From Cycas panzhihuaensis (lineage: Eukaryota > Plantae > Cycadophyta), in the NCBI GenBank assembly GCA_023213395.1, contig CM041465.1:245899741-245963740 (forward strand): a DNA stretch of 64,000 nt, given 5' to 3'. Positions within the stretch are counted from its first letter, which is position 1, and every line of letters starts with the position of its first letter. The position numbers and the translations under genes are program-made. The notes under the pieces are model-generated. The model was not told the origin of the DNA. It made no database searches and saw only the letters and a program-made list of their open reading frames with translations. Below are positions 20,632 through 63,830 of this stretch, piece by piece.

Positions 20632-20699
<68 letters not shown>

Positions 20700-35340: not shown

Positions 35341-35901
35341 ATATTATCTTATTTGATTCCATTCTTCTTAGTGTTAACTTACAGTATAATATATTGGCTA
35401 TCCTAAAACTATTTGTTTATACATCAATTATATATCCTTTATTACGTTAGTTCTAGTCTTGACATGTCTTAGAGCCTCTTACACCTTATTGACTTATTGT
35501 TATATGTTAGTAATTATTGAAAGAAATATGGGCAAGTAAAACATACTATTAATGTGGCAGTTAATTGTTAAGCCACTATGTTAATGTTAATGTGGTTTAA
35601 CTAAGGTGATTGAAGTGAAAATGTGTGACTTATTCAGAGGGTCACAACCCTAATCAGGTGACACCTCTTGGAAGAGTACAAAAGCCTTGAGGCCTTATGT
35701 ATTCAATGTATCACAATCATTATGGAATAATAAATGTGATCTAGAACGATCTTTTATGGTGCGGTTTCTCTTAAAGGGGTTTTTCCACATAAATCCTGTA
35801 TACTATGCATCTATTTTCTATGTGTATCTTATTTACTTACTGTGTATGGTTAAAGATTCTATGGATGGGAACATTTATGTATGACTTCATGTTCCTAAAT
35901 A

Positions 35902-36108
35902 TGGTATGAGGGCCAAATCTAGTGTTTAAATCACCTCAGGTTTGGCATGGGGGTAGGTGTTAGAGTATCTCGCTAGTCCCTTGGGTGTTTCCAACCTATC
36001 CTTAATTAGCTCCATGGGTGTCCTCAACTTGGGTCAAGCCTGTCATGTTTGTGGGTTGTGGCAAGATCAATTGCACCCAGGTCTTTTGGTTTAATGACAA
36101 TTTTAATA
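35902..36108 (+). mobile_element. TRIM-like mini-unit (PBS, ~45 bp, PPT, 151-bp LTR) between the 5' LTR and canonical PBS of E
   Basis: tggtatgagggcc (35902), gggggtagg (35949-35957), tgttag...ttaata (35958-36108), then tggtattagagt. Absent from sister element C. Confidence 0.65.
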
Positions 36109-37474
36109 TGGTATTAGAGTCATAGGGTCCTACATAGCTAAAGCCTGATGTTGAGTGGAGCGGTGAGATTGTTAATTGCTGGGTGAAGCTGTCAAACCCA
36201 AGACTTGTCTTGAGGGTCCATCAACTCTAATAATGTGTAGAAGTAGGTATAGAAAATCAATGGTGGTTAAAGCTGTAAAGTTCACTAATCAACAAAGAAA
36301 AATAGTCAGTTGTGGTTATTATTCATGCGTGAAGACCATAAATGTGGAAAGAGGTGGCTTGTTGGGGGTCATCAGAAACTAGTTGATAAACAATCAAATT
36401 GTGAAATCTAGTAGAAGCATGTAGTGATGGAGATCAAATATTATTGAGGATAGCCATGCCTATTTACATATAAGTCGATGATATCTCTCATTAAAATACC
36501 ATAAAAATCAATGAGATAAGCTCATTTTTGGCTATTGCCTACTATCAAATCCTTTCTTAGCACTTGTGGATGTGATTGGAGCATGTACCAGTATTTTTTT
36601 ATCTATATGTATATGCTAGAATAAGTACACAGCAATAAAATGCTATTTTCATTAAAGATTTTTATATTTATGAAGAATATTGGTGACTTACATGTGTGAA
36701 TCAAGCTCATAGCAACTGTATTAAGTTGGTTAAGCATATTCTTGAGGTGGATGGGCATATTTGAGGGGTTATTAGGTAGTGTATAGGCTATTTACCAACT
36801 ATATAATTAGTGTACGTGAGTGTGGCTCCCTGCGTAGGTCTTTTTGATGTACATAAGTTGGTTTAAGTCTATGGAAGCCATGCCTCTATGTATCATGCAT
36901 ATATGAACTTTTGATCCATCTTTTGATGATTAATACTAAGGTTTATCACTTAGTAAATAATATTATATCTTATGTATTTTATTTCTACATGTGGATTAAG
37001 TGAAAAGGCATGGGCCGTAAGAGAGAGTCATAACTTTAAGAATATACCTTTTGGTATATTCTCCTCAATAGAACATTATAAAAAGGAGCTCTTTTACCAT
37101 TGATATGATATATTTTATCATAGTGTATTGTATTTGAGGCCCTAATAAGTCATTTTGAGCATGGATTAAGGAGAATTCTCTATGTTTTGACTTGGAGACC
37201 GTGTATTTATACTCCGTGGAGTTATCCTTTATACTTGGAGCACTATTTTAAGTGCCTTAAGGGTCATTTTTTAACATTTTAAAGGGTATTTAAAGGCATT
37301 TGTGGGTCATTTATGAGGGAAAATAATTAGTGACTCACTCAACGCATGTATAGTCAGTGTTTGGTGCCCTCTAGAGTGTACCCTTGAGTTAGAGGAGGAT
37401 ACGAGGGTGCATTTTTATCCTGAAGGCATTCATTTTGGTGAGTGTTTAACTTATATTGAAGCCCATTTCTCAAG

Positions 37475-40400: not shown

Positions 40401-41390
40401 AACCTATATGTGAAGAGAAGAAGGACTTCAATAGTTACTTGCGTGGTGTATATGGATGATTTGATCATCAGTGATAATTGTGATAAGGTTATTACTAAAG
40501 TTAAATATAATCTAAGAGTTTTATTTGACATGATAGACCTCAAGAGACTTCACTACTTCTTGGGTATTCAAATTAGCCAAATGGATGATAGGATCATATT
40601 GTTGCAGTTACAGTATATGAAGAACTTACTAGAGAAATTTAGAATGCAGAATTACAAACTAGTTGCAACAACATGTAAAAGGTATAAAGTTGTAGAAGAA
40701 TATAGCCAAACCCTCTATAGATAGGATGAAGTATTGTCAGTTGGTGGGGAGTCTAATCTATCTGACTCATACTAGGCCAGATATTGCATACATTGTTGGA
40801 TTGGTTTCCTACTATATGCAGAATCCTCATGAGCCTCATTTAGTTATAGTGAAGTAGATTCTGAAGTATCTAAAGGAAACAATCAATCTTAGTCTTAAAT
40901 ACCATCGAGGTGAAGGGATACAGTTACATGGCTACACAAATTTTAATCAGGGAGGAGATTCTAATGATAAAAAATCCTCTACTAGATACTTATTTAGTGT
41001 TGGTAGTGGGTTTATTTTGTGGTAATTGAAGAAGCAACAGATAGTGATGTTATCTTCTATAGAGGTTGAATATTAAGGACTCAATGTTGGTGCAAAGGAA
41101 GTTGTATGGTTGTAAGGTATCTTGGATTTTCTTGGAGTTTCTAATGGACATCTAGTTATCTTTATTGATAATCAGAGTACCATTCACATGTCAAAGAATC
41201 TAGAGTTTCATGCATGTATAAAGTATATTGAGATTCAATACCACTACATTTGTGAATAGATCAAGTCAGGGAAGCTATAGGTTGACTATTATTCGAATGA
41301 ATTCTAGCTTGTAGACATGTTCAATAAGCTAATCATTGAAGATTAATTTACAAAGATGCATACCAGATTAGGACTCACTAATGTTATCCT
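37475..41390 (+). pseudogene. Copia gag-pol of E
   Basis: EGCMYGKH..KLELIQSDIIGP; IKSLRSNNGKEY..PQQNEVTERKN (INT); VGCKWVYKTK..YKAKLV..GIDYEETF and VVYMDDLII (RT). Confidence 0.92.
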
Positions 41391-44300
41391 TAAGGGAGGA
41401 TGTATCGATAAGGATAAAGAAGTTGTAGGATAGTCCCATCCTTTATGATAACACAATTATTACAGTTGGTAGGCTCCCCACATTCACATTAAGGGGAGAT
41501 GTTAATATAGCAGTTAATTGTTAAGCCACTATGTTAATGTTAATGTGGTTTAACTAAGGTGATTAAGTAAAAAGATATGACTTATTCAGAGGGTCACAAC
41601 TATAATTGGGTGACACCTCTTAGAAGAGCATAAAAGCCTTGAAGCCTTATGTATTCAATGTATCAAAATCATTATAGAATAATAAATATGATCTAGAAGG
41701 ATCTTTTGTGGTGGGTTTTTTCCTGAAAGGGTTTTCCCACATAAATTTTATATACTGTACATCTATTTTCTATGTGTACTCTTGTTTACTTGTTGTGTAT
41801 GGTTAAAAATTCTATAGATGGAAATATTTGTATATGATTTCATGTTCCCAAATACATACTTTGATACCACTTGTAAGAAACTAAATGCCCATGCATAGGT
41901 CCAAGATCTAAGAAGGCTATGAAATTAAAGATGTGTATGCCAATAATAAATAAAAGAATATGTACAAATATATAATACAAGCTTTTATGGGAAATGATTA
42001 CTTCTAATTATATTATAGTAAACTAATACACATACACACACACACACATATACATAGTACATATCACTATTTGATTGTCTAATCATATTCTAAGAGCCAC
42101 TTAGTCAATTAATGACTAATTGTAATAAAAGAAGTATATACTTTATGACCCCTTAGTATACATTAAAGGGATAACCATATTGATATATATTAATTTAATA
42201 TTCATATGGGTTAACATTACCTAGTATTCTTCTCTTAATACTAAATCATGTCACATAACCGCTTTCAATCTTAATGTTAGGTCCATATAAAAGTTAAACA
42301 TATAATAGTTAGTACATGGATAACTAGCTATCATATCCACCAAACCTCTAGAATGGCATTCTCATACATGGCTCACCAATGTTTATCTACTAAGTAGCCT
42401 TTACCTACTCTCATTTTGCTTATTTCTAGTTCTCTTACATCTTAAGGAGATAAACCTAGTTAGAAAACCTTAGCCCCATCTATCGTATTATGGAATAAAC
42501 ATGTAAAAATAGTTATTTGAGTAAAACCATATGACAAAATCCCTCTTTTCTTGATCTTAGGCTCTATTTTACACCTTGTTAACTCATTGCTTAAACTTCA
42601 TACCATTAAAACTACCTTGAAAAATCTTCAAAGTATATCATGTGACCATTCGTTAGAAAGTCTCATGAGTCAATTTCACAATGCAACTAATAAAACTCAA
42701 TTTTGATGTTGTATGACAGAATTATATCCATTTATGTGAGCACAAATATACTTTCAATAAAAAAGTTAAAAAAAAAATAAAAAATAGATTTTTTGAGTTG
42801 GCCCCCAATCACTTTAAAATATCCTATATGACCTCCTAGGTGGCTTACGAACTTCAAACACATCTTAAAAAATATTTTTATATAATTTAATAAAGTTTTA
42901 AAACTTTAGATTAAGAGAAATTGAATGTCAATAGGTCGTTTGACGTGTGCATGACCTGCACGCATCCGTAGGCAATCTGATGGCTTATACACAAAGTGAC
43001 TAACCTTAGAATATAATTACTAAGAAATAAATTTTTAATATATCTACCTTTTGTCACTTGATTCCAATGTTTAATTCTTAAGCACAATGGTTTTCTTAGA
43101 AGTTTTCATGATGACACTACTTTTAAAACCCTTCAAGTCCTCTTTTCTATTGTAGATTAGAAATAAAGAGGATAAATAACAATTATTTTTATGAAATGAC
43201 AATTATTAAATCCTTTAACTTATTGATAGGGTAATGTGTCAACTAAACCCTAACAACTTACTTCTTATTGTATATACACAACTGTCCAACTATTCCTTTC
43301 AACGCATAGGTTCTCAATGATTCAATAAGCTTTATAAACCTAAACTTATTAGTTTTCTTCACATGGGCTAACAAACCGTCTACTGGTCTTAATATGCTAT
43401 AAAACCTTTTTCAATCATGATACCAATTTATGATAGTAGATAAAATTATAGTCAATCTACCATAACATTGGCTTCACATAGTGATCATGCCTATATCTGA
43501 AGCCTTACTCTTAGACTTATGTGTAACACCCATATGTATATTAGTAAAACATGTAAATAACAAGTTTAATAATGAATCAAATATATGGAAAACCTTTGAA
43601 GGATTTGAGATAACTTTAATACTTATGTTCTAGCTAGATTTTCTACATAGGCATCAACATGCTTTAGGCTTATGACACTAACATGCTTTTTAGTATCTTG
43701 CATAACTATGGTTTGAAACCATCCATAATGTATAATAGAACCTCACCTTCTAAATAAATAGGTGACTCCCCTTATTGGTTATAAATAGACATTCTTAAAA
43801 TAAGTTTAAAACAAACACTTTGAAAAGGGTTAATGTCACAAGATCATTATATTAGTTGACTATTTCTAAAAAGTGTCTTAAGTGAACTTTAAATTAGATC
43901 ACTTAAGTGAAATGCACTTTCATGTGCATTATGTGTAATTTCATTTCAACTAACTCTAATGCTCCCTCTCTCAATTTAAAAGTAAAAGCTCAATGGAGGA
44001 GGCCCATTCTTACCTCCCCATTTTGTGAGAACTATTTTCTTTCTCTTAAGTCTCTCTTAGTCACATGTTTGCCTTTATGTTTAGTGCATGGAGATGAAGG
44101 ATAGATCTACTCTTTTCATGTAGTATTAGAGCTTTCTTCCTTCATATTCCTCGCTTTTACTTGTAATGGAGCCATCACTTCTTTCTCCCCCTCAATCCAT
44201 GTGGTGAAGGAGATTGTGAAAGTGGATTTAGAAATATTTTTAAGTTATTATCATAACATATTTTGTATTGTTTTCTTTCCCTTTCTCTTTTGTAGGTTTG

Positions 44301-44639
44301 GAAGAATAATATAAGAAGTTTTAAGGCCCAAGGATTCCAATAATTTGGTGGCCATTTATGCTATCTCATTCTTCTTTGTTTTCCCCTCTTTTTATCTATT
44401 TAACAAGGGGAAATGTTGCCAAAATTTTTTCAGCTTTTAGAAGAATGATTGTAAGGGGAGGTTCTACCAATTTTTTAAAAAGAATTTAGAGCCATTTAAA
44501 ATATCCATCATTGTATTCTCTCACCTTGCCTATATTGGGACCCTGGCGATAAAAAAATAATGGAAATTTCATATGGAATCATGTGTTAATAAGATATTAG
44601 CAAACTAAAATTTTTGCAGAAATAAAATTTGCTTGCTAA

Positions 44640-44980
44640 ACTTCATAGGTCTATAAAATATTCTATAGAGCTCCAATTGACCTGATTCTAATTGTTAAAG
44701 ATGAGACTATGAGTCTACTTTCTAGCACAAAATTAAAACCTAATTTCGATGTTGTATGAGAAAGTTCTTGCTATTTTAGTGAACAACAATTATTTTTAGT
44801 AAGAATTCTAGAAAAATGTATTCTCTTAACTTTGTGGGACTACTAAAAATTTTTTAGAACTCATTTTGACCTGATTCCACTTTCTAAAGATGAATCTTTG
44901 AGTTTAATTTATGGCACAAAAATCAATACTCTATTTAATTATTGTGGGAGAAAGTTATTACTGATTTAGTGAAGACTACA
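44640..44980 (+). repeat. Degenerate ~189-bp tandem duplication in the H 5' UTR
   Basis: tgacctgatt..aaagatga..tgagt..gcacaaaa..gagaaagtt repeated at 44678 and 44867. Confidence 0.7.
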
Positions 44981-45856
44981 TTTTTTTTTGTATTAAAAAA
45001 AAAAGTGAAGAAATTTTCTTCCTTCTTTTTATAAGGCTTAAAAGCCCATTGTAAAAGTGAGTAAAAAAACACCTGGATTAGAGTAATATCTGGTGTCCTC
45101 ACTTACTTATTAGCATTACATTTTATCACTTTAAGCAAGCACTCTAAAGACACTCCAAATAAGCACTCAAAGCAAGCACTCCAAGTAAGCATTATATTTT
45201 CAGTAAAATGTGCGTTTGATGCAATTCGATAATCTTTTCACTCTTCCTAAAAGGAATGCATCACGTACCCTATTTTCTTCCATATTTCACTTGTTCACAT
45301 ACTCACCAAGGTTTAGATACCTTAGTTGGAAGAATGCCATGCCATAAAGGGGGTGTGAGTTTTAAGTTGGGACTGAACTGAACTAGATTATTGGTGAGGT
45401 TTGGCTAGCCATACCATCATGTCTCAATCAGGGATCATCCTGATAATCAACCAAGAAAACTAAAACTTTAATACAAGATTAAAATATACCGGGTATAATA
45501 TTCGTCATAGCCATAGGTATGCATGTACTACTCTTTAGAGGAGTTATATAGCTACTCATTGGTGAACTCGGTGAGGATTGGGAGTACCTGGGCTCCGTTG
45601 TGACTTAGATTTCATCACCAAGTATAATTGCAGGTATCGCAGGTGAAGGCCAACTTAATTCTACTAGAATCTTAAGCATCCCTTTAATAACCCAACTACA
45701 TGTTGGACACAAGTTATAGGTTGTTGGGTTGATTATACATCCTATATTTGAGTTTCAAGTTGTGTACACCCAATGATGTCAACTTCCACATTGACCTATA
45801 ATCTTGTATATTGATCACTTACTTATTTGTAAAAAGTGATTCATAGTGTAATCATA

Positions 45857-46052
45857 ATCATATTACTTCTCATATTCCTACTGCGTTAGGTTAATATTTT
45901 TCATAAGTGTTAGTGGTTAATTTTTATCATAGTGCTTCTCATATTACTACTACATCAGGTTAATATTTGCCACAAGTGTTAGTGGCCAATTTTCATCATA
46001 GTGCTTCTCATATTCTTGTTGTGTTAGGGTAATATTTGTCACAAGTGTTGGT
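45857..46052 (+). repeat. 69-bp tandem repeat, ~2.8 copies, upstream of H gag
   Basis: cttctcatatt starts at 45866, 45935 and 46004. Confidence 0.9.
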
Positions 46053-46217
46053 AACTTTTCTCTAAGTTGTTCCCTTCATCTTTGAGCAACTATTCTCATT
46101 TCTTCTTCCTTTTGCTACACTACTTCATTACATCTCCTATTTGTAAATAGTGATTGGTCATTTATTGCCATTACTTTTATAATCCTTTATTCATTTCTTC
46201 CCTTCTTAAAAGACACA

Positions 46218-49200
46218 ATGTCTTCACAGTTCAAGTAAAATGTGAACTGCATTCTAAGAAGGAAATAAAATTGGGACATATGGTTCACTAGTGTTAGAAA
46301 TGCTATAAAGGTTTATGGAGAGATCACTTGCAACCTATACCATCTATTGTAACTACAACTACCTCAGTTGCTTCTAGAGGAGGTGCTCCAACTGTTCCCA
46401 TTGAAGCTATAGCCAAATGCTAATGAGAACTTGATGATAATAAAATCCATATAGGGATACTTGTTATTACTAATTATTCCTTGTATAATCTCATTGATGA
46501 AGCTATACATGATACAACAAGAAAAGTTCTTGAAGTTCTTAAAAAGAACTTTGACACTAAATTAGACTTAGAATTTATTCACTTAGTGCTAAAGATGAAC
46601 AAATTAAAAATGTAGAAAGGGCACGTAAGTGAGACAATCAATCTCCTTCGTCCAATCAAGTAAGCCATTAATAAAGATTTCAAAACTCAATGTATTACAT
46701 GGGCTTTCTTGATTCAGTCATGTCTCTATATCCCAAATTACAAAAATCTATTGGGAAGTCTTTAATCTAGTGGCACTTTGAAGACCCTAAACTTTGAGGC
46801 TCTTGCTAATAAGTTCATTGAATTTGATGCGACCTTTCATACCAACTTTTCCACTATATCAGATCTAGGTGATGTTACTTTCAAAGTGGAAGAAGATCTT
46901 TTTTATACCAAAAATTAAGGTCAATACTCTCACAGAGGTGGTAATTCTCATGGAAGAGGAAGAGGTAGATAACAAGGACAATGTCCTTTTGGTTAAAAGG
47001 CTTCTCAACTCCAATAAAAATAGTCTCAAAGCCAAGGCTAAAATAATCAACCTAGACCTAGATCCAATAACTAGAGAAAATCCAACCAGCCCAATACTTC
47101 TTATGGGACTGGAAATCAAATAATTATGTGCCAAATGATTGTAGAACTGCCACCAACAAACTACCAAGCTATTAATAGTGCCATGGTACACATAATATTG
47201 ATAATAATTCTTTTGAAGATGATTTTGGTAGAACATAATTTGCTCATGCATATCTTCAAAGAATTGGGACTACTTCATCAAACGTTGTTGATAAATCCAC
47301 TAAGTATATTGAGGCTCATTGTGGCTATGCTTATTCACTTTTGCCTTTACTACTTGGAGTTGCAAATAGTGCCATCTTAAATACTTTATCATAGATTATG
47401 GATACTGGAGCAATATAACATATGACTTGTCATTGCTAATTATTTTAGGATTTTGACTCTGAAGTTCTTGGTGTTGTACACATGGTTGACAAATCATCTC
47501 TACTAGTTAAGCGACTTGGAACTATTTTCCTAAAACTCCAATACCTTCTAGATTTTACCCTTGTTGGTGTTTTACATATTTTTGCTTTGAAGTAAAACTT
47601 ACTCTCCCTATCCACCCTTGTCTCTTATGGATTTGATCTGAGTGTAATGTAAATAATAAAACTCTTTGTGTAATTTACCCTCCTTCAAATGCTATAGTTA
47701 TGACCAGAATTCTTGATGGCAAACTTTTTTTCCTAACTAGCTCACCATGCTTTGAAGCCAACTATGTTGATGGTGACTCTGCTTTTGCCACAACACTTAC
47801 TCATCAAAAGTTATCCCGAGTGGCCCTATGGAATTCTTGTATGGGCCATATCAAAATTGATCATTTAAGAGAACTATATGCCACTCTTCCTGGTATGCCT
47901 AGGCTCTCCTCAAATCCCTTCAAATGCAAATCATGCATCATTACCAAATCTCAAAGATAACCCTTTTTTCATAGTCAGTGTAAATCTAGCCAAACCTTGT
48001 ATCTTGTATACTTAGATATATGCGGTCCTATACCCATCCCTTCTCTCAAATAGAAGTGATACTATATTACTTTTATTGATAATTTTACCAAGAAAGTATG
48101 GGTTGCTTTTCTTACAAAGAAAGATGAAGCTTTTTCTATGTTTCAAGCTTTCAAGGCCCATGTAGAAAATGAATCTGAATTCAAGATTAAAATACTTAGG
48201 ATTGAAAATGGTGGCGAGTACACATCTAATGAGTTTAAATCATACCTATGTCAACATGGAATCAAACATCATACCACTATTGCAGGTATACCCCAACAAA
48301 ATGGAGTTTCCAAGCGCATAAACAGGACCATCATGAACATGGCTCATGTTATGCTGATATATAAGAATGTCCTTATCTATCTTTGGGCTGAGGCTATCTA
48401 GACTATCGTGTATTATATCAACACTGTTAGTCCCTCCAAGCTTAGCCCCTCTCCATATGAAATGTGGTATGGACAAACCCCCTCTATCTCCCACTTCAAA
48501 ATTTTTAGCTCTACTTGCTATGCTCACATTCTGGAGGAACATAGAAACAAGCTCCAAGATAGATCCGTTAAAGGCATCTTTATCAGATACCCTATGGACA
48601 AAAAGGGTTATAAGGTTTTCATATCTTTATAGTGCAAAACCATCATTACTAAAGATGTTATCTTTGAAGAGACTGAAGATCAATTACTCAGACTTGACTC
48701 CAAGATGCCTTCATACCGATTTAGTGATGCTACTAAATTTGATGTCTAGATTCCAAAATTTAGGGGGGGAGATACTCAAAAGTTGCTCAAAATCTTAGAA
48801 TCTGACAATAGAGCCCTTAAGGATACAAGCTATGACTCCCAACCAATGTGTAGACATCTAGTACCATTATTTATGAATAGCCAAGTTGACAAAGGTAAAG
48901 CCATAGTAAAAGGATCATCTTCTCTAACATCTTTGGCTAGCCCATCTTCTCTAGCATCCTCAACTTCCTCCATGCCAAACATTTCACATGATTCTTTTTA
49001 GGATCAAAATGAAGACCAAGAGATAGTGGAAATGAAAACCTCATTCCCAACTTGAGGTTTTTGTGAAGCCTACCTACTACACAAGTACATGTGACTAGAT
49101 GAGGTAGGCAAAATTGGCACTAGAAGTTCCTATAGAGTAAGGATGCATGAATAACTTTCTGTTGAGATTGAACCAACAGAACTGCACCTTTCTCTTAATG

Positions 49201-50750
49201 AAGAGCCTCTAACATACCAAGAAGTTGTAAAACATGTGACTCAAAGAAATGCCATCAATGAAGAGTACTAACCTCTTATCAAGAATGATACATGAGAGTT
49301 TGTTGATCTACCACTTGGAAGAAAGGTAGTTCAAAATAAATGGGTGTTGAAAAACAAGTATAGATTAGATGGCACCCTAGAAAAACACAAGGAGAGGTTA
49401 GTAGCAAAAGGATTCATGAAAAGGAAAGGTATCAACTACACTGAGATATTTGATCACTCCTATAACCAAGTGGCCTACAATAAAAACTCTTATAGCCTTA
49501 GCTGCTCAACAAGATTAGAAAATCCACTAACTTGATGTTAAGACTATATTTCTTAATGGGTATCTTAAAGAAGAAATTTATATGGCTTAGCCAGAAGGAT
49601 ATAAGATTATCAATTAGGAGCATAAGGTTTATAGGCTTAAAAAGTCCTTATACAGCCTAAAGTAAGCCCCTCATGCTCGGTCTACCAAGTTGTTTGAAAG
49701 AATGAGGTAACTTGGATATAAGGTTTGTGACTATCAAGATATGTATGCAACATTATTCATCAAGCGCCAAAATAATAAAGTCACTTACCTCTTAATCTTT
49801 GTGGATGATATGTTAATAATGGGAAATAATGAATAGGTAATCAACTAGCTAAAGAAGGACCTTGCTAAAACTTTTGAAATGTTTGACCTCATGTTGATGA
49901 AATATTACTTGGGAATTGAAGTAACTCAAAAGAATGACAAAATCTTTCTCTCCCAAGAAAAATATATTAATGATCTTCTGATAAAGTTTCAGTTGGAAGG
50001 TAATCGACCATTCGATACACTTATGGAACCTAATATTAAACTCTCAACTGATGGTGATACTAGGGAGGTAGATGCAATACTCTATGGGTAACTTGTAGGT
50101 AATCTCATCTATACTACCAACATAAGGCTGGATATTGCATACTCTATCGATATTCTTGCAAGATCCATGACAAATCCTACGCAAAATCACTTGCAAGCTA
50201 CAATACGAGTGTTGAGGTACCTAAAGATGACCAATAAATATGGTCTATTATATGAACACAATGAAGAATTTAAACTTTATGCATACATAGACTTAGACTT
50301 TGATAGAGATGAAGACACAAGAATATCTACGTTTAGGAATATAACATTTCTTGGAACATCAACAATATCATGGAGATCTAGATTATAGAAGATAATTATG
50401 GACGCAACTACCAAAGTTGAATATATTATTGCTTCTAAGACAAGCAAGGAGGTGATATGACTTAGAAAATTATTGAATATATTAAATACCACCCAAATAA
50501 GTTCTACTAGCTTATGTGTAGATAATTAATCTACAATCCAAATGGCTAAAAATCTTGTATTTTATGATCGTACCAAATATATAAGTATGAAAGTCCACAG
50601 GATTAGAGAATTAGTTCATAATGGCACAATTCAACTTGAGTACTACCCCATAGTAGATCAAGTGGCTGATATCTTCACCAAACCACTAAAGAGGATGAAG
50701 TTTGAATAGTTCTGAAAGTAACTCAGCCTTAGGGCCTTTATCTCTTATTG
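46218..50750 (+). pseudogene. Copia gag-pol of H
   Basis: Protease DTGA ~47402; KIKILRIENGGEYTS..PQQNGVSKRINRT (INT); YRLDGTLEKHKERLVAKGF and KYYLGIEVTQ (RT); DQVADIFTKPL (RH ~50660). Confidence 0.92.
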
Positions 50751-51594
50751 ATTGAAGGAGATGAAAATAGGACCATCATACTCCATCTCATTTGTGAAGA
50801 CTCCTTATGGGTGCAGAAGGACAAGAGTAAGTCTTTGCTCTATTCCATTTATGAAATCCCCTTATGGATACGAAAGGATAAGGGTTTTGTCATTTGAAAC
50901 TTAGAACCAATAAAAACTTGAAAGGGTATGGGGGATGACCAAATGGTATATGGAGACTCAGTAGATTTTACCTATAAAATTCATTATACTGATTGGCTAT
51001 CTAACTTCATTTAAAGAGTTGCCTGAGCCAGGTTAGTAGATTAGAAAATCTATGGGTTTTCTTACCCATGAGGGTTGTCACAAAAGTGTCATAGTAGTTT
51101 GCTTTGTAAGAGACTCAGACAAAGACCTTATAGGATAAAATAAAATAGGATGAAATGACCTTCTACTATTAAGGGGGAGACTGAAAAGGGTTAATGTCAC
51201 ATGGTCATTACATTAGTTGATTATTTCTAAAAAGGGTCTTAAGTGAACTTTAAATTAGATTACTTAAGTGAAATACACTTTCATGTGCATTATGTGTAAT
51301 TTTATTTCACCTAACTATAATGCTCCCTCTCTCAATATAAAAGTAAAAGCTCAATAGAGGAGGCTCATTCTTACCTCCCCATTTTTTGAGAGCTACTTTC
51401 TTTCTCTCAAGTCTTTCTTGCTCCCATATTATCCTTTGTGTTTAGTGCATAGAGATGAATGATAGATCCACTCTTTTCACCTTTGATAGGTGGACACACT
51501 TATAATCTTACAACCTAATCGCAGTTAAAACTAGGCTAGGGCCAAAGCTCTAATAGACTCACTATAAAACTAAAACCATAGCTTTGATACTAAT

Positions 51595-51978
51595 TAAAAG
51601 AAACATAGGTAAGAAGAACATACTCTACTGCCACTTATAAGAAAGTAAATGCCTATACATAGGTCTAGGATCTAGAAAGAGTATGAAATAAAAGACATAT
51701 AAGTGAACAATAAATAAAAGAATATATACAAATACATAACATAAGCTCTTGTGAAAAATGATTACTTCCAATTATATTATGCTGAACATGTATATATATA
51801 TATATATATAGTACATATCACTACCTAGTTGTCTAATCACTTTCTAGGAGCCACTTAGTTAACTAATAACTAATTACAATAAAGAAGTGTGTATATTATG
51901 ACCCTTAGTATACATTAAAGAGATAACCATATTGATTTATATCAATTTAATATTCATATGGGTTAACATTACCTAATA
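51595..51978 (-). repeat. Element F 5' LTR
   Basis: Homologous to 35518-35546 + 41855-42226. Confidence 0.88.
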
Positions 51979-52419
51979 CTTACATATAGATTGATGTAAC
52001 ATATAGGAAAGACTTGTACCACTACACTCATATGTATAATGTATATTTTTTCATGTAACTTAATATTTTATTAAATGATTATAAAATACAATATTCAAGG
52101 AATATTTTACCTTATGGTTATGCTTAATTACTTTACTCTCACATTGAAATAAAGGGGAGAATACCATTTATAATATTTTGACTTAGAGTGTACATCTATT
52201 ACATATGATTCTTGACTTTTCATAGAAAAAGTCAACTTACAACTAATTAATTATGCCTTTTTTATATGTTTGTATGGTTGTATGAATATGTTATATACCT
52301 AGATATAACATAATGCTAAGAATATATTGTGACCTGTTTTGTCTCTAAGCCTAACGTCTATGTATTAGTTTAGAAGGGGTTAATACTACATTATGCTATT
52401 TTTGGTTACTTTAGGATAA

Positions 52420-52706
52420 TGAAGGATTATGTAATAATATAATTAGGGTTCCTTTCTCCCTTGAATATAAATTAAGGAAAAATCCTAACTGATGCATTAT
52501 TCATCATTTGTGAAAGTAATCTAATATAAAAAATTATCATTATATAATCTCTTGTGCATTTTCTATTTGATTTTTAGATGTAGATCCAACTAGGGTGTAT
52601 AGGTACCCTCTATTATTGTATTCCTAAGTTTTCCTTTTGCTTATGTTTACAAGTTGCTTCATATCCTCCTAATCTCCTCTAGGAATGTTGCAAGTGGCAT
52701 TAGAGC
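52420..52706 (+). mobile_element. Fragment K: probable LTR 3' end plus tRNA-iMet PBS
   Basis: gttgca-ag-tggcattagagc at 52687-52706. Left boundary uncertain; no partner LTR in the window. Confidence 0.45.
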
Positions 52707-52820
52707 TTTAGTTAATCTCTAAATTTGTTAAAATCAATAAAAGAGAAAAATAAAATAAAAAATCAATAACATGCTAATGAGATGAATGAATCAATTTAAG
52801 TTTATAAGAAAGAAGAAACT

Positions 52821-53260
52821 TATTAGAAATGTAACCATAGTATATGACAACCAGGAATGACTGAATATTATTAGAATATTATCATTATAGACTTTAATAT
52901 CAATCTCTTTACATCTCATCTTGTAGGTGTATTTATAGTCATATTATAGGTATATGTAGGATTATTTTCCTCACCTAGAACTAATAATATTTGGATTTTA
53001 TGTTGACTAATTATATATGAACTTCAATTTAGTCAATTATATTAAATATGCATTATATTCTAATACTCTCATATAATGCATATTTGGTTGTATACTAAGA
53101 TTTTGTTTGAGCTAAAATTATTTGGTCTTTGATAATGCTTTAGTAAGAATGTCTATAACTTGGTCATCTATCTTGTAATACTGAAGTTAGACTTGTTGAT
53201 TATGAGTGCATTTTTTGATGTAGTAGTGTTTGATGTCATTATATTTTATTTTGTTGTGTA
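52821..53260 (-). mobile_element. Element I: 3' end of a Copia (RNase H C-terminus 53090-53260, probable 3' LTR 52821-53065); interrupted by G
   Basis: Minus strand TKYNDIKHYYIKK..LQYYKIDDQVIDILTKAL. tattagaa...ttctaata inverted termini. Confidence 0.7.
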
Positions 53261-54805
53261 TGTTAGTGACCATGGTTAAGATTAACATGTGGCAAACTTA
53301 ATGCTTCATGTGGTGATAAGTGACGGAAACTAGGAACAAGATATGAAGAGTCATGAGTATCAAGATTTGAAGGGACATGAAGGATAGAGATATAAAGGGG
53401 CAAAAGTACCAAAGTTCGATGGGGCATAACCTTTTGAAAGAGTTTCAAACTTTTTGGAAGAGTCATAACTCTTCATATTTGTATGCTTTAGATCATTTAT
53501 AATGGATCCAAGATAGGGTAGAATAGAAGTAAGAAGGAAACAATGTAATTATTGGTGCATCTAATCAGTCATTAATTATTACTTTGTGTGTGGGTTTTTC
53601 TCCTGAAAGTGTTTCTGATGTTAAAACTTATATACTCTATGTTCATTCTTCTATTTGATTTCCATGTATGTTATGAAAAACTAAAAAAATATCTATTAGG
53701 AATTCTACATGGCATTAGGGCAAACTTGAGTATATCTAAATCTTATATGGTATTAGAGCCATTCAGAAATATATAATGTTATGAAGTTGTTTAGGACAAG
53801 GTTATTGACAGGGTTGGTGACATAATCATAGTTAATAAAATTGACCTTGATCATTTCAACACTTTATGGAAGCATCATTTAGATGTGAGAGCTCATGTTT
53901 GAGTTGTATATAAATTAGTTTAACTGATATCTAATCTCTAGAGAAGTTTTGAATTGTTTTATTAGAAAAAGGCTAAAAATTAATGATTTTTTACCATTTG
54001 GAGAGGTTTTTTACTTGTTTGGAGTTGGTGGGAGCTCATTGATCAAAACCAGAGGCTACTTGTTATCTGTTGTGGAGCTACAATGATTCTAGAAGAGATT
54101 TAGACCTTAATCTATCTTCGAAGAGGATGTTGGGCACTATAGAAAGGGTTGGAGGCTATTTTTAACCAAATCAATGAGTTTTCTCTTTATTTTATGCCAT
54201 TTGCATCAAAATTTTGGCTCTATTTTTCACTATAGAGGTTGCTAGATACTATCTAGGGATATTAGTAAGTTAAAGACTGAGTTGTTTGGTGAATCTAAGC
54301 CTTTATTTAGGTTGATAGAGTCACATGACCATGTTAGAGTGGTGACAATATTATACATAATGTTACAACTTAAAAAAAATCAAATTAATTTGATAATTAA
54401 TAATTTATTGAGTTACCGAATATTTTAAGACATTAAAGAGATGATTTTTTATCAATTAAAAGTAATGTTAATGTGACTTAATTTAAAACGAAAGTCATAA
54501 AGGCATTTTGAAGGGAAATGACTATTGAGAGTCTACAATGCTCCAATGGATACAAATATACAACTATTTGATCATTTTTGAAGACAAAAATATGGTGCAT
54601 AATAATTCTATACTCATTATGATAATTTATAAGCCTTTTTATAGCCATATGTTGGAGAAGTGAGTATTATTGTAGTGTTGTGAAGCATGTTGGGTGTGCA
54701 TAGAGATTTGTGGGAGCTATAGGAAAGTTGGTGAAATGTTTTGATTAGGGTTATCAACTATAGAAGAGTAGAATGTAGAGTTTCATAGTCATTTAGTGCC
54801 AAAAT

Positions 54806-54841
<36 letters not shown>

Positions 54842-55198
54842 TTTTGGATATATTTTTGAGCTATCGAAGGGTGTACAACTCGTTATTTTCTAATTGGATA
54901 ATGTCTATTACTTGAATGTGGAAATAAACCTATTGGAAATCACATAGAAGTATTTTTTTGATGAAGTGAGCCACTATAGAGGTTGTTTTATTAATTTTAA
55001 GCTTATTTTGGGCCAATTTATTGCTTATTGAGATTATTTCAGTCTGTAATAGGTTATGAAAAGAGGTCAGAAAAGTAGGTTTATTTGTGGGAGACACATT
55101 TGGCAAGTGTATGAGCCATGCTTATTAGGATTGAAGTGTTATTTTTAGTAATTTAATCTATAGGGGTGTTCATCAAAGTTGCATCTTTAATATTTAAA

Positions 55199-57847
55199 AT
55201 GGAGAAGTTATCACAAATAATCTTTAACAAGAATAACTTTAGCGAATAAAAGACTACCATGTAGTTACATCTAATGTCAAATCAATTATGGATAATCACC
55301 AAGGATCTAATTGCTACCATCCCCTCAATGAAGAGAAAAGGAATCAATTAGAGGAGAAGAAATTCATGGAAATTAGTTTGTTAAGTCTGTCTTTTATCTG
55401 AGATCAAAGGGCATTGGTTCATGATCTCAAATTACCAAATGAAATTTGGTTGAAGATGCTTAAGACCTATGAATTAAAGAAATTGAATTAATGTCTTACT
55501 TTATTGATGGAGTTATTGACTATTGTCAATGAAGATGAGAATAATATTAGTGCTTACCTTAACAAAGTGATAGATTTGAGAAATAAATTGGAAGTAATTA
55601 AATCAAGATCCATTGATAGGGAGTAATTTTTTGCTCTTGTTATTTAGAAATTACTAGGTCCCTTTACTACATTTTAAACCCTCTATACAAATGATACTTT
55701 TGTATAGCAGATGAAGTTTGAGGAGTTGAAGAACCTAATTTTGGATGAGGATGCCAAGTTGAAGCATCATGGTTTACTTTAAAATTATGAATCGAACCAT
55801 GCCTTCATGATGAAAATATAAAGGTTGAGAGGTAATCGATAAGATAAAGGTTAACAGAAGGTTAATTCTTGAAAAAAATAGGAGCTAAAAAAGAAGAAGA
55901 AGAGGTTCACTGAAACTTATAATTATGCAAGAAGGTAGGCCATAAAGAAGTAAACATAAATTGTTATCATTAAAAGCAGGAAACACATAAGAAAAAGGGA
56001 AAGGATATTGAAGTCCATTGTGTAAAGGTCAAATCCTCATTATCAAAGGATAGGTGGATTCTTGATTTGAGAGCATAATGGCATATAACTTTCTCGAAGG
56101 AGATGTTTACAACATGTTGTAATGACCCCTATGATTCTCAAATTATTCTCAGTGATACCCATTCTATATCAGTTAAGGGTGTTAGAACTATAAATCTTAT
56201 AGGGAGGATTTTCATTAAGGTGTATAATACACCAAAGATGACTAAAAGTCTCTTGTCAGCTAAGGAGATCTATAAAATAGATTTAAAGATTGAGCTTTAC
56301 AAGCATAAATACCTAATTAAGGATCAAAAGAAGTACTTTTCTATTATTATGACTAAAAAAGTGGATAATGATTTTTGGGTGTTTGAGAAATTTTAGAATC
56401 CAAACCATTCATATGCTATTATAGCTAGTGTAGTGTAGATGAAAGTAGTAGTTTGTGGCATGAAAGAATAGGGAATTTTAATTATGGTAGTATAGCCTTG
56501 ATAAACAAGTTGAAGATGGTGGAAGGGTTGCCACAGATCTCATGTTCAGATGGCATTTTCAAAGGTTACGTGTATGGAAAGCATCACAGATATCCTTTCA
56601 ATTGGGATAAAGCCTAGAGAGTTAAGGAGAAAATGCATCTTATACACTTAGATATGATGGGTCCACTCCCCATATTTCATTAGGAGGAGCTCGATATAGC
56701 TTGATGTTTATAGATGATTACACTAGGAAAACCTAGGTGTATTTTCAAAGTAAGAAGTCAGAAGTATTTGATCAATTTTAGGAATAGAAAGCTAAAGTCA
56801 AATATCAAAGTGATAAAAGAATAAAAATTTTGAGGAGTGATAATAGAAAGGAATATGTCAATTATGCCTCTAACAAGTTTAGCCTTAATCATAGTATCAG
56901 ATAGGAACTAATAGTCTCATATACCCCACAATAAAATAGTGTCATAGAGTGGAAGAATTATACTTTGATGGAGATGGTTTATTGTATGGTGCATGTATAA
57001 AATTTGCCACAAAAATTTTGGGTAGAAGTTATTAGGACTACTATTCATGTGTTGAACTAGGTACCTACCAAAGCAGTCAATGGCATGATATTAAAAAGAA
57101 AAATGGATCAATTAGAAGCCTTTCATTGATTATTTTAAAGTCCTTGGGTGCATTTCATATGTACACATTCATGACAATAAATAAAAGAAGATGGATAACG
57201 AGAGTTGGAAGTATGTATTTGTGGGGTATTTGAATCAAAACAAGGCCTATCGACTATGGGATCTAGAATTAGAGAAATTTTAAGGTTTATCAAGATGTTC
57301 AGTTTGATGAGTTGATAATGTATCATATCACAAGTGTTGAATCTAAGAAAGTTCCAGGTATGTTATTATTGTTGAATCATTCTTGGTTAAATAATAAGGA
57401 TTCAAGTGAAGACAATTAAATCAATAGAGATATCATAGGGCAATAGTCACATTAGGAGGTAGTAATGATGCCAGGACCCTTGAGACCCTTATGGGCAAAG
57501 AAGATAATTGAAGCATCCGATGTGACTATAGATCCATTAGATACATAAATAATAAGAAGTTAGTATGCTAATCATATTCTTATGGTAAATACCATATTCT
57601 CTCATGAGTCAGATTCTTTTCTTGAATTAGAGAAGAATCCTCAATGGTGAGTTATAATAGAGGAGGAGTATATTTTAAAGAATAACACTTGGGATTTAGT
57701 TCTATTACCTTCATGGAAAAACTTTATTAGATGTAAGTGGGTCTATAAAATAAATATTAAAGCTAATAATAAAGTGGAAAAGTTTAAGGCCAGACTTATC
57801 ACCTAAGGTTTGAAATAGAAAGAAGGGATAGATTATGATGAGACTTT
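55199..57847 (+). pseudogene. Copia gag-PR-INT-RT(start) of G
   Basis: Colinear with E 37475-40110; many stops. Confidence 0.88.
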
Positions 57848-58399
57848 TAAAGGAAAATATAATGATGGAGATAGAGTAAAGCATAATCACATAGTAAAAA
57901 ACATTGTTGTATAAACATATAAACCTTTTTATTCAACCCATGATAAGTGAGTACACAGCAAATCTCTAAATGTAGGCAATGTCTAAAAACACTAGGGTTG
58001 CACACCCCTTCCAATGTATAATTTGGAGGAGGAGGGAAATTCCTCAACCCCTAGAATTCAAACAATAATAAAATATTACATAACTTAACTCAAATTAACT
58101 TTAACCTTACCTTACACTTACCTTCACATATGAGAATCCACATGTGTAAATTGGTGGGAGTGGGGTGTGCACTCCTATGTGAAAAGTGGAAGTGGGGTGA
58201 TGATCATTAACCCCTAACATTCTTCTCCTTAATGGTCATCATAAATAACTTTGTCTTCTCTTTAAACTTGTGAAATTTGAACTTGAAGAAAACTTTAAAA
58301 TTTTATTTTTTAGCTTGATCACTACTAACTCACCTCATCCTTTTAGCAATATATGTCTCTTTACCATTGAGTGATTCCAAAAATCTCCAAGTAAATGTA

Positions 58400-58938
58400 G
58401 CTTGATTCAAATGTGGATGTGTGGCTGCAACTTTAACTTTATCTCCTGGAACTTTAACTTTGTCTCCTGAAATTTTTGTGTTATGAGTGACTGTTATATC
58501 ATAAGATTTCTCCCCTTTAAATGGAGGATCGACTTCTTATGCAATAAGATGATCGTGCATTTGACTTGGAATTTCCTTGGTCTTTTTATCATAATCCACC
58601 TGCTATGGCACCGGTCTCATATGCTTAATAACATCAATGTTAAATTTATTTACTTTGAAGGTTTCTCCCCCATAAATAGAAATTGAGGTGTCCCATATAG
58701 ATTTGGAAGTTGTCATTTCACACACTTTAGAGAAAACATTATCATCTATAGTACAAAATAGTAAAGCTAAGACTTCATTATCTTTTTTAATATTTTCTTT
58801 AATACTAAGATCATATTCATTTTGTAGGTAACTCCAAAGATTATTTATAATAAAATATTTTTGCATTGTTTTATGCCATTGTAAAAATTTATGGCCATCA
58901 AATATAGAAAATTATATTTTATTTAGATTGATTGCCAT
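58400..58938 (-). pseudogene. Truncated Copia gag of J
   Basis: FDGHKFLQWHKTMQKYFIINNLWSYL..KKDNEVLALLFCTIDDNVFSKVCEMTTSKSIWD (Copia gag N-terminus). Confidence 0.82.
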
Positions 58939-61731: not shown

Positions 61732-62036
61732 GCCTCAGAAATTATCTTGAATATGTGTGATAAGGTTCTAGATTCAATTGGCTAGTCTATTCCACTAGAT
61801 GAAGTATTAAGCAGTCATCTAGTGAATGTCATGGAGCATTTTGCCAGTGAAACTTTTTGCACACTGTGCCTTGCTTATATTGACTTAGAAGATAAATTTA
61901 TTCCTAAGAATCAAATATAGGGAAAGGTTACACTTGTATAGCTATTGAGGGCATCAAGGATCTAATTCATCCTAGTGTCAAAGATGCTGTTGAAACATGC
62001 AAATCTATTGGAATAACTGTTTGAATAGTTACCAGA
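61732..62036 (+). pseudogene. ACA: Captured fragment of a P2B-type autoinhibited Ca2+-ATPase (N/P-domain junction)
   Basis: ASEIILNMCDKVLDSIG*SIPLDE...HFASETFCTLCLAYIDL...GYTCIAIEGIKDLIHPSVKDAVETCKSIGITV*IVT vs the ACA consensus KGASEI..CDK..FAxEALRTLCLAY..GIKDPVRPGVKxxVxxCxxAGITVRMVTGD. Contains stops and one frameshift. Confidence 0.9.
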
Positions 62037-63830
62037 GAAATAATGCAAATGTACTAGAGCAAATGTACTAATAGCATTATTTTTTTTTTCTCTCTTATAC
62101 CAAATAGAGAAAATGTACTGAGATTATATATGGCTTTAACTTATCAGTTCTATTTGCCCAACCCAATTAGATTGGGTAGTATGAGCACCAATTTCAACGG
62201 AAGATATCCTATTCGCATAAGTACACCAATGAGGATCTGTAGTTAGAAGCTATTAAAGGCTGTAATGATGGCCAAGAGGGAGTATTTGCCCAACTAAAGG
62301 AATCAATAAGATAGATTCTTTTATGACACAGTAATGAAATATATAATAGCTTTATTTTTCTTCTGAATGTAAACCATGCAACAGGCTATAAAGGAGAGAT
62401 CTGGCTCATCAGATCTCACCACCACACAGGCTCTCATGGCCTATATTCAAAATGGAGTAAATGTAAAATATAACGGGGAAATATTTAAAATATACATATT
62501 TATATAAAATATAAAAGACCTAGATCTCCCTCTAGAGGAGTATTGTGTTTTGGCTATAATTTTTTTCTTTAAATTTAAATGATTGGTCTGTACCTTATGA
62601 ATATGAAAGAGTATCCCAATATGGAGAATGAAGGCAAGAACCAGATCTTTTAGATATATCGATGAAAATATATTAAATAAATAAAAACTATATATATTTA
62701 TATTTGAAATCTTTCAAGTATACTAGAGCAAATATATCAAAGAACCAAGAAATATATATGTTTAAATTTGAATATAAAAATAAGAAGAACTTGGTAATGT
62801 AGCTGTAACAGGTTTGAAGAAGAATGACTTTAGAGCGTAAGAACTTCTTCCAAAATGGTCAAAACTTCGAACGGATTTCTCCAGTAGATAGATTGGCTAT
62901 AGTATAACTTTTCCAAGAAGCTTGTTAGCATAAATATAAACCTAATATTACACAGATCTGAGAAAAAATATTGAATAAATGGACCAAATATACAAAAAAC
63001 GGTCAAATATTTAACAAAATATGTAGATCTAGAGAAAATATTGCATAGATCTAGAGAAAATATTAAGTAAATAGATAAAATACACTAGAAATGGTCAAAT
63101 ATATAACAAAATATATAGATCTTATTGATAAAACTTTGTAGAGTGATAAAACTTTGAATATTTGTTGATTACAGCTATGATCCTGCAAAGATCTAAAAAA
63201 AATTTATTATTTCACAAGTATAAATCAAGAATAATTAGATTTTGATGAAAATAATACAAGAAACTATTGAAAAACTTTGTAGAAGATAAATATAACCAAT
63301 ATTTGGCTTACTGTGAGTAGATCTGCTACAGATGCTAATGGATCTTCTTTCTCCTCAAAAAAACTTTAACAGGCCAACAACCTGAGTAACAGACTAGCAA
63401 TCTAAGCAACAGGGCATCAATCTTTGGCTCTAATACCAAATGAAGGAGTTGAAGAAGCTTAGATAACAAATGAAGGAACATATAATGATGGAGATAGAGT
63501 AGAGCATAATCACATAGTCGAAAACATTGTTGTATAAACACATAAACCATTTTATTCAATCCATGATGAGTGAGTACATAACAAATCTCTAAATATAGGT
63601 GGTGTCTAAAAACACCAGGGTTACACACCCCTCCAAATATATAATTTATGGGAGGAGGGAAACACCTCAACCCCTAGAATTTAAATAATAATAAAATATT
63701 ACATAACTTAACTCAAATCAACTTAACTTAAAATAACTTTAACCTTACCTTACATTTACCTTCATATGTGAGCATCTACATGTGTAAATTGGTAGGAGTG
63801 GGGTGATGATCATTAACCCCCAACAACTTT

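What the first reader, a model, noticed from the sequence alone, without database searches (positions are those of the whole stretch)
35518..63470. Recurrent PBS-spacer-LTR-end duplications in unrelated elements: a possible LTR-extension / dual-primer system
Seen: at least four elements with different LTRs have two tRNA-iMet PBS motifs in tandem, each preceded by an LTR-end-like sequence and separated by unrelated spacers. The units are J (30 bp), G (38 bp), F (41 bp) and E (207 bp), with weaker candidates in H (40 bp) and a further one in F (34 bp). In J and E the unit is only at the 5' LTR; in F it is in both LTRs. Established: whichever PBS primes minus-strand synthesis defines the U5 end that is copied into both LTRs. 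Inference: these are snapshots of one process in which a second att+PBS arises downstream, priming shifts to it, and the old PBS plus spacer is absorbed into the LTR. LTR ends would then grow stepwise and archive old primer sites. I know of no description of this as a general system but could not search the literature.
Basis: partly seen in the sequence, partly recalled or inferred. Interest (0 to 1): 0.85.

Follow-up and report, generated by a model that had tools for sequence, protein, structure and literature searches.

The report
Tandem primer sites shift LTR ends
In several plant retrotransposons in this window, the short site where a tRNA starts DNA copying is duplicated together with the last bases of the terminal repeat, and which copy is used decides where the repeat ends. 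I found the same pattern in many other plant-like sequences and no paper that describes it.

Summary
In J (period 30), G (38) and F (41), a decayed copy of [LTR end + tRNA-iMet PBS] lies upstream of the better PBS. That is far more than chance allows. E (207 bp) does have two PBS, but its spacer is unexplained. The H and second-F candidates are at chance level.

J and E carry the unit only on the 5' side. F carries it in both LTRs. Reads from related plants show that G-family LTRs also end at the second unit.

Complete elements with target-site duplications show every state: unit 5'-only, one or two PBS inside both LTRs, and one insertion whose 3' LTR has one unit more than its 5' LTR.

About half of the families are recognisable tandem duplications of the LTR-end/PBS junction, so the spacers are not truly foreign. 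LTR growth by absorbing PBS is supported. A one-way ratchet or selected "system" is not shown.

First readers of this scan noted the pattern in at least 26 other windows of this genome; those notes are unchecked. Nine literature searches found no description.

The parts
63471..63825 (-). J 5' LTR (TG..CA). TSD AAAGT lies at 63826-63830.
   Evidence: 86% identical to the 3' LTR. The 5-bp repeat AAAGT flanks both ends.
63457..63468 (-). J PBS1 (TGTTATCTAAGC, 3 mismatches to the iMet PBS), 2 nt after the LTR end
63439..63456 (-). J spacer (10 nt) plus a second copy of the LTR end (CCTTCA + TT)
   Evidence: the 20-nt block CCTTCATTTG.TAT...AGC is repeated at period 30. The spacer resembles neither flank.
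63427..63438 (-). J PBS2 (TGGTATTAGAGC, 1 mismatch)
57848..58219 (-). J 3' LTR. It ends at the first LTR end and lacks the 30-bp unit. TSD AAAGT lies at 57843-57847.
53262..53747 (+). G 5' LTR as delimited by read depth. It contains relic PBS1 (53710-53721, TGGCATTAGGGC), the spacer and the second LTR end (53739-53747).
   Evidence: depth falls about 9-fold at 53748. In each run 34-39 contigs carry loose ends after 53741 that read TCTCACA and then vary.
53748..53759 (+). G PBS2 (TGGTATTAGAGC), the PBS that abuts the family's LTR end
51595..51978 (-). F 5' LTR. It holds relic LTR end + PBS1 (51644-51622; TGGCAGTAGAGT here, TGGTATTAGAGT in most family contigs).
51581..51592 (-). F PBS2 (TAGTATCAAAGC), 2 nt after the LTR end
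41855..42226 (-). F 3' LTR, first piece, with relic PBS1 at 41869-41858 (TGGTATCAAAGT). It is cut by the insertion of E.
   Evidence: 18/23 to F's second unit, the unique best match in the window
35518..35546 (-). F 3' LTR, last piece beyond E: one TSD copy of E, then the spacer and the second LTR end, ending in CA at 35518
35547..35901 (+). E 5' LTR. TSD CATAC lies at 35542-35546 and 41855-41859. The 3' LTR is 41502-41854.
35902..35913 (+). E PBS1 (TGGTATGAGGGC), directly after the LTR end
35914..36108 (+). E 195-nt spacer of unresolved origin, flanked by the 10-nt direct repeat AATATGGTAT
   Evidence: no similarity to the LTRs or to the rest of the window. The second half is weakly like the family's leader (p 0.015-0.03).
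36109..36120 (+). E PBS2 (TGGTATTAGAGT), the counterpart of the single PBS of sister element D
28618..28629 (-). Control: the single PBS of D (LTRs 22851-23191 and 28640-28981). D belongs to E's family and lacks the 207 bp.
44121..44132 (+). PBS of the element nested in F (LTRs 43821-44118 and 51182-51479). Its '40-bp' partner is at chance level.

Best explanation
These are iMet-primed, copia-type LTR retrotransposons and non-autonomous relatives. The junction between the LTR end and the primer-binding site has been tandemly duplicated, giving two or more units of [last bases of the LTR, ending CA plus 0-2 nt] + [12-nt PBS].

Minus-strand DNA starts at whichever PBS holds the tRNA, so everything upstream of that PBS is copied into both LTRs.
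- If the first PBS is used, the extra unit stays in the leader (J, E).
- If a later PBS is used, the earlier PBS and the spacer become part of both LTRs (F, G).
- The repeated PBS should also allow out-of-register pairing at the plus-strand transfer. That would explain copies whose two LTRs carry different numbers of units.

Each unit must keep an LTR-end copy, because the integrase needs a proper end on the longer LTR.

Shown by sequence: the units, their positions relative to the LTR ends and TSDs, and all the states.

Inferred: that alternative priming and slipped strand transfer, rather than later DNA-level changes, produce those states. Also inferred: that the first duplication arose either in the genome or during reverse transcription.
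For: In the window:
- The unit pairs in J, G and F are far above chance.
- The distance between the LTR-end CA and the PBS is the same for both units within each element: 2 nt in J and F, 0 nt in G and E.
- J's LTR ends are fixed by TSD AAAGT and E's by TSD CATAC. The unit is absent from the 3' LTR in both.
- F's two LTRs stay homologous for 41 nt past the relic PBS, up to the second LTR end.
- In contigs of four runs from two related organisms, the F relic reads as a near-perfect PBS, and G-family LTRs end at the second unit.

Outside the window:
Those 4 are plain bacterial tandem repeats.
- The loci fall into 47 families.
- In 24 of 44 families the 6 nt before PBS1 and before PBS2 agree in at least 5 positions.
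- A CA sits 2 nt before the PBS three to five times more often than background.
- Copia gag follows the arrays in L006 and L015, and a plant LRR receptor gene lies next to L057.

Complete elements, written as (PBS on the 5' side, PBS inside the 3' LTR):
- (2,0): L007, L088, L006.
- (2,1): L074 (TSD CTGCA), L089 (TSD AAATC).
- (3,2): L057, L110, L001.
- (2,2): L079 (TSD TGTCC).
One family shows three of these states with the same 42-bp unit.

Established knowledge: the PBS that is used sets the U5 end, and vectors built with two PBS initiate at both (Voronin and Pathak 2004, J Virol 78:5402, cited in PMC3902901; I could not read the paper itself).
Against: - No direct evidence of priming; every state is read from DNA.
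- The window's elements are old (LTR identity 80-91%) and there are only three solid cases.
- In J the PBS next to the LTR is the more decayed one (3 mismatches against 1), although the LTR ends there. This needs either bad luck (about 5%) or a later 30-bp loss from the 3' LTR between the two CCTTCA repeats.
- Spacer homology that would prove a tandem duplication is weak in G (p=0.04) and absent in J and F.
- E does not fit the short-unit pattern.
- The metagenome loci were picked for two perfect PBS. Their hosts are mostly unidentified, several loci are the same insertion seen in different samples, and I have no count of single-PBS elements to set them against.
- Unequal unit numbers could also arise after insertion, by replication slippage.
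Confidence: 0.75

Rival explanations
1. This is ordinary DNA-level minisatellite behaviour only. Short tandem duplications arise and change copy number in the genome by replication slippage or unequal exchange. They happen to cover the PBS, and reverse transcription always starts at one fixed PBS.
For: - 26 of 44 families are recognisable tandem duplications, and 7 of these have an arbitrary phase that mixes leader and LTR sequence.
- Arrays can grow to 30 units of 30 bp (L022).
- Tandem repeats are common in these elements (cranberry LTR elements, 10.1101/2021.07.15.452536).
- The unequal LTRs of L079 could be a later gain or loss.
Against: - In F, L074, L089 and L057 the same units sit in both LTRs and the 3' LTR ends exactly at a unit's CA, next to a TSD. 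The unit was therefore upstream of the PBS used in that cycle.
- Other copies or families end the LTR before the first PBS (J, L007, L088, L006).
- One family shows several end positions.
- Both facts need more than one PBS position to have primed.
- Duplication edges at the 3' end of the PBS are over-represented: about 10 of 20 unambiguous families, where about 5 are expected.
Confidence: 0.15
2. For E only: the 207 bp is an unrelated insertion into the PBS (a small mobile element or filler DNA). It duplicated its target, and the second PBS is a by-product.
For: - Sister element D lacks it.
- It is flanked by a 10-nt direct repeat, AATATGGTAT.
- The first 90 nt match nothing in the LTRs, the leader or the window.
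Against: - It has no terminal inverted repeats and no LTR-like ends.
- A 10-nt repeat fits no LTR insertion, which would give 5 bp.
- The second half resembles the family's own PBS + leader (p 0.015-0.03), which points to an internal rearrangement.
Confidence: 0.35
3. The motif pairs are chance look-alikes in AT-rich, decayed sequence.
For: - At <=3 mismatches the motif is no more frequent than in shuffles (44 found, 47 expected).
- The H, 52695 and third-F candidates, and E by the 23-mer test, are at chance level.
Against: - Expected numbers are 0.009 for J and 0.023 for G.
- F's 3' LTR copy is the only 18/23 match in 128 kb.
- Three of nine elements have a partner on the same side at 30-41 nt.
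- The same architecture with exact PBS occurs in 47 families elsewhere.
Confidence: 0.03

Closest known systems
Retroviral vectors engineered with two primer-binding sites (Voronin and Pathak 2003/2004, MLV and HIV-1 vectors; reference seen in PMC3902901, paper PMC400373 not held)
   Same: There are two PBS on one RNA. Either can start minus-strand DNA, and use of the downstream one carries the sequence between them into the LTRs. This is the mechanism proposed here.
   Different: Those were laboratory constructs with long spacers. Here the arrays are natural and have 2-30 units of 16-54 bp. Each unit has its own LTR-end copy. They occur in plant copia-type and non-autonomous elements, and the resulting states are fixed in genomes.
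[quoted passage not shown]
   Same: It is a natural short duplication at the PBS of a reverse-transcribing element, and it is stably inherited.
   Different: The duplication is partial and is not reported as a second start site. It includes no copy of the LTR end, and the LTR boundary does not move.
Short tandem repeats inside LTRs and untranslated regions of plant LTR retrotransposons (for example cranberry, 10.1101/2021.07.15.452536; Ogre 3' UTR repeats, from memory)
   Same: These are tandem repeats of tens of bp that vary in copy number within LTR elements. About half of the PBS units are recognisable as such duplications.
   Different: Those repeats are not reported to contain the PBS and the LTR end, and they do not shift the LTR boundary.
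Two-part or second tRNA-binding sites of Ty3 and Gypsy (PMC1635307)
   Same: There is more than one tRNA-complementary site on one genomic RNA.
   Different: In those elements the second site lies at the 3' end of the RNA and pairs with another part of the tRNA. It is not a tandem copy and does not set an LTR end.

Membership tests
LTR retrotransposon primed by tRNA-iMet (Ty1/copia-type priming) | Two direct LTRs with TG..CA-type ends, flanked by a 5-bp target-site duplication | tested here: met
   J: AAAGT. E: CATAC. LTR pairs found by self-BLAST. F's TSD is not clear. G's 3' LTR lies outside the window.
LTR retrotransposon primed by tRNA-iMet (Ty1/copia-type priming) | A 12-nt site complementary to the 3' end of tRNA-iMet (TGGTATCAGAGC) within 0-5 nt of the 5' LTR end | tested here: met
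   each element has one at 0-2 nt from the LTR end, with 1-3 mismatches that are mostly C>T and G>A decay.
LTR retrotransposon primed by tRNA-iMet (Ty1/copia-type priming) | Copia-type gag and pol coding sequence | tested here: inconclusive
   There are no long ORFs. E's 124-aa RT piece matches copia-type reverse transcriptases (9633 hits). F and J look non-autonomous. The G fragment gave no hit.
Ordinary tandem duplication / minisatellite | Identity between successive units over the whole period, spacer included | tested here: inconclusive
   In the window, TRF finds nothing at these places. G's spacer resembles the LTR upstream (p=0.04); the spacers of J and F do not. Among the metagenome families, 26 of 44 meet this feature and 18 do not.
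Dual-PBS behaviour as in two-PBS retroviral vectors | Progeny whose LTRs include the sequence between the PBS (downstream PBS used), alongside progeny whose LTRs do not (upstream PBS used) | tested here: met
   F and G against J and E in the window. States (2,0), (2,1), (3,2) and (2,2) among complete elements, with three states in one family.
Dual-PBS behaviour as in two-PBS retroviral vectors | Direct demonstration that tRNA primes at each site | not testable with these tools
   This needs mapping of cDNA ends or of strong-stop DNA.
Independent solo-LTR or miniature-element insertion with its own TSD (considered for E) | An insert with LTR-like or inverted termini, a 5-bp (LTR) or family-typical TSD, and copies elsewhere | tested here: not met
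   The direct repeat is 10 nt, there are no terminal repeats, and there is no other copy in the window. The rest of the genome could not be searched.

The most novel reading that the evidence does not exclude
The arrays are made and resized by reverse transcription itself, through slipped or end-to-end plus-strand transfer at the tRNA-copied PBS. Each replication cycle can then add, drop or absorb units. On this reading PBS arrays act as a self-renewing primer-site ratchet. It lengthens LTRs, gives heritable LTR-length differences within a single insertion, seeds minisatellites (30 units in L022), and is kept because spare PBS protect against PBS decay or tRNA-fragment silencing.
Probability: 0.25. 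Interest if true: 0.85.

Novelty: new variant of a known kind. Interest (0 to 1): 0.68.

Why it matters
Textbook LTR elements have one PBS and a fixed LTR boundary, and annotation tools assume this.

If arrays of [LTR end + PBS] are common, several things follow:
- LTR length and the LTR/internal boundary can differ between sister copies, and even between the two LTRs of one insertion. That biases LTR-based dating, boundary calling and family clustering.
- LTR ends hold a readable record of former primer sites.
- Nature has already run the 'two-PBS vector' experiment many times. This gives a way to study primer choice, the needs of the integrase at LTR ends, and the fidelity of plus-strand transfer in plants.
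- Such arrays are one route from a retroelement to a minisatellite.

Tried and rejected
- The repeat finder on the whole window was swamped by a low-complexity tract at about 2540-5050. I used self-BLAST instead.
- TRF does not see the units in the window; they are too diverged.
- The similarity between F's 3' flank and the leader after PBS2, which would have meant a third absorbed unit, is not significant (p=0.09).
- E's spacer against its LTRs, D's LTR and the leaders gave only marginal hits.
- The search for homologous proteins with G's 97-aa ORF found nothing.
- The search of protein representatives with E's RT piece gave only distant copia RTs plus two short close hits.
No other copies of the E or G families could be read as sequence.
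- Viral contigs holds no tandem PBS.
- Voronin and Pathak 2004 (PMC400373) is not held.
- One paper search failed on a term that was too short.
- In one search I once joined two short pieces of F's 3' LTR across E's insertion (88 nt) for a look. I then redid the comparison with the pieces kept apart and rely only on that.
From the reads I report only majority letters at two places and the loose ends.
Full report
**What the window is.** Self-BLAST and reading of the ends show a nest of decayed plant-type LTR retrotransposons. Their primer-binding sites (PBS) are of the tRNA-iMet type, TGGTATCAGAGC, mostly with C>T or G>A decay.
- E (plus strand): LTRs 35547-35901 and 41502-41854, TSD CATAC. E lies inside the 3' LTR of F.
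- F (minus strand): 5' LTR 51978-51595. The 3' LTR is 42226-41855 and resumes beyond E at 35546-35518.
- Another element (43821-51479) is nested in F.
- G (plus strand): LTR about 53262-53747. It is cut at 57848 by J.
- J (minus strand): LTRs 63825-63471 and 58219-57848, TSD AAAGT.
- D (22851-28981) is a sister of E, 77% identical.
- No element has a long ORF.

I compared the 23-mer made of 11 nt before the PBS plus the PBS with every position within +-300 nt, and took the expected number from the whole window.
- J has a partner at -30 with 17/23 matches (0.009 expected).
- G has one at -38 with 16/23 (0.023 expected).
- F has one at -41 with 15/23 in the 5' LTR. The copy in the 3' LTR scores 18/23 and is the only such match in 128 kb.
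- The distance between the LTR-end CA and the PBS is the same in both units of each element.
- Controls C and D have no partner.
- The 40-bp 'H' and 34-bp 'F' candidates, and a -41 partner at 52695, are at chance level.
- E's pair is at chance by this test. Its first PBS sits exactly at the LTR end and its second is the counterpart of D's only PBS, so E does have two PBS 207 bp apart.

**Where the LTRs end.**
- J's 3' LTR stops at the first LTR end, next to the TSD, so the unit is 5'-only. The same holds for E.
- I aligned F's 3' LTR in two separate pieces around E. It stays homologous to the 5' LTR through the relic PBS and 41 nt further, to a CA at 35518.
- G's 3' LTR is outside the window, so I laid contigs of four low-coverage runs of two related organisms on 51480-53880. 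The G LTR is a high-copy family.
- Its depth drops about 9-fold at 53748. In each run 34-39 contigs have loose ends after 53741 that read TCTCACA and then differ, one run's majority continuing with a PBS.
- The family's LTR therefore ends at the second unit, and G is in the same state as F.
- In the same data nearly all contigs read A at 51628 and 51630. This turns F's relic from TGGCAGTAGAGT into TGGTATTAGAGT, so the relic was a good PBS in the family.

**Are the spacers foreign?**
- G's spacer resembles the LTR just upstream of the first unit (p=0.04).
- The spacers of J and F show nothing significant.
- E's 195-nt spacer is unlike its LTRs. Only its second half is weakly like the family's PBS + leader (p 0.015-0.03). 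It is flanked by a 10-nt direct repeat.
- E remains unresolved and should not be pooled with the short units.

**Beyond the window.**
- First readers of this scan noted similar arrays in at least 26 other windows of this genome. These are unchecked notes by the same kind of reader, and I used them only as leads.
- For independent data I scanned metagenome contigs for two exact PBS 12-42 nt apart.
- The same pattern found nothing in viral contigs.
- It found only four loci in 596 Gb of prokaryote genomes, and all four are plain bacterial tandem repeats.
- The 124 arrays fall into 47 sequence families, with 2-6 exact PBS per array and periods of 16-54 bp.
- One contig (L022) holds 30 copies of a 30-bp unit that contains the PBS.
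- Copia gag follows the arrays in L006 and L015, an integrase lies in L007, and a plant-type LRR receptor gene lies next to L057.
- In 24 of 44 family representatives, the six bases before the first and second PBS agree in at least five positions. A CA two bases before the PBS is three to five times commoner than background.

**States in complete, young elements**. I write each as (PBS on the 5' side, PBS inside the 3' LTR) and count shared insertions once.
- (2,0): L007, L066/L072, L088, L006/L102 (TSD ATCAT) and the L015 group.
- (2,1): L074 (LTRs 97.5% identical, TSD CTGCA), L089/L095 (TSD AAATC), L039 and L064.
- (3,2): L057, L110 and L001.
- (2,2): L079 and three other contigs of the same insertion (TSD TGTCC). 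Here the 3' LTR carries one unit more than the 5' LTR.
- One family shows (2,1), (3,2) and (2,2) with the same 42-bp unit.

**Origin of the units.** In 26 of 44 families the spacer can be read as a tandem duplication.
- In about 10 families it is a copy of the LTR end alone, so the right edge of the duplication is the 3' end of the PBS.
- In 3 it is a copy of the leader start.
- In 7 it is a mixture, meaning an arbitrary phase.
- In 6 the phase is ambiguous.
- In 18 the spacer matches neither flank.
- The excess of edges at the PBS end (about 10 of 20, where about 5 are expected) is suggestive only. It would fit a slipped plus-strand transfer, because plus-strand strong-stop DNA ends exactly there.

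**Mechanism.**
- Established: minus-strand DNA starts at the PBS that holds the tRNA, and everything upstream becomes U5 in both LTRs. Vectors with two PBS initiate at both (Voronin and Pathak 2004, cited in PMC3902901; not readable here).
- Shown here: natural elements with unit arrays, whose LTR ends lie before the first unit, after the first, or after the second.
- Inferred: any PBS of an array can prime. The LTR-end copy in each unit lets the integrase process the longer LTR. Repeated PBS allow out-of-register strand transfer, which gives unequal LTRs.
- The states are then interconvertible rather than a one-way ratchet.
- Unexplained: in J the PBS next to the LTR is the more decayed one.

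**Literature.** Nine searches found no description of natural arrays of LTR end + PBS in retrotransposons. The nearest items are:
- the two-PBS vectors;
- the 23-nt partial PBS duplication in HIV-1 MAL-like isolates (PMC3185550);
- the 5' and 3' tRNA sites of Gypsy and Ty3 (PMC1635307);
- tandem repeats in the LTRs and UTRs of plant elements (10.1101/2021.07.15.452536).
Most subscription journals are not covered, so earlier mention in a family description cannot be excluded.

**Verdict.** The finding is real for J, G and F. It is real but of a different kind for E, and at chance for the weaker candidates. LTR growth by absorbing a PBS is supported and is widespread in plant-like DNA. The 'unrelated spacer' and 'general system' parts are not supported as stated.

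Noticed in passing
L022:150-1052: A metagenome contig holds 30 copies of a 30-bp unit that contains the iMet PBS (79% matches). It is a minisatellite apparently built from PBS + LTR-end units.
   Followed up: partly
L079 (also L082, L098, L119): One insertion (TSD TGTCC) was seen in four contigs with LTR identity 93-96%. Its 3' LTR holds two PBS units, while its 5' LTR holds one unit plus the working PBS.
   Followed up: partly
window 63457-63468 vs 63427-63438: In J the PBS that abuts the LTR has 3 mismatches and the downstream one has 1, although the LTR ends at the first. Possible causes are chance decay or a later 30-bp loss from the 3' LTR between the two CCTTCA repeats.
   Followed up: no
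window 41855-41869: E inserted directly beside F's relic PBS. Its TSD CATAC overlaps the last bases of the motif. This is probably coincidence.
   Followed up: no
window 2540-5050: A long low-complexity tract with periods of about 8-14 bp lies inside the multi-kb LTR of the large element at 1717-22488. It is absent from, or much shorter in, the other LTR (18869-22488).
   Followed up: no
window 1527-1703 + 22487-22631 vs 31647-31959: Element C's 5' LTR is split by the large element. D sits in C's leader, giving at least three levels of nesting.
   Followed up: no
window 45857-46049 and 62944-63122: There are internal tandem repeats of 69 bp x2.8 (in the element nested in F) and 92 bp x1.9 (in J).
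   Followed up: no
L121-L124: The four prokaryote hits to the tandem-PBS pattern are short bacterial tandem repeats (20-45 bp units) that contain the 12-mer by chance. They served as a negative control.
   Followed up: yes
window 51642-51965 and 53262-53747: The LTRs of F and G are high-copy in contigs of runs from two related organisms. Most copies differ from the window by more than 5%.
   Followed up: partly
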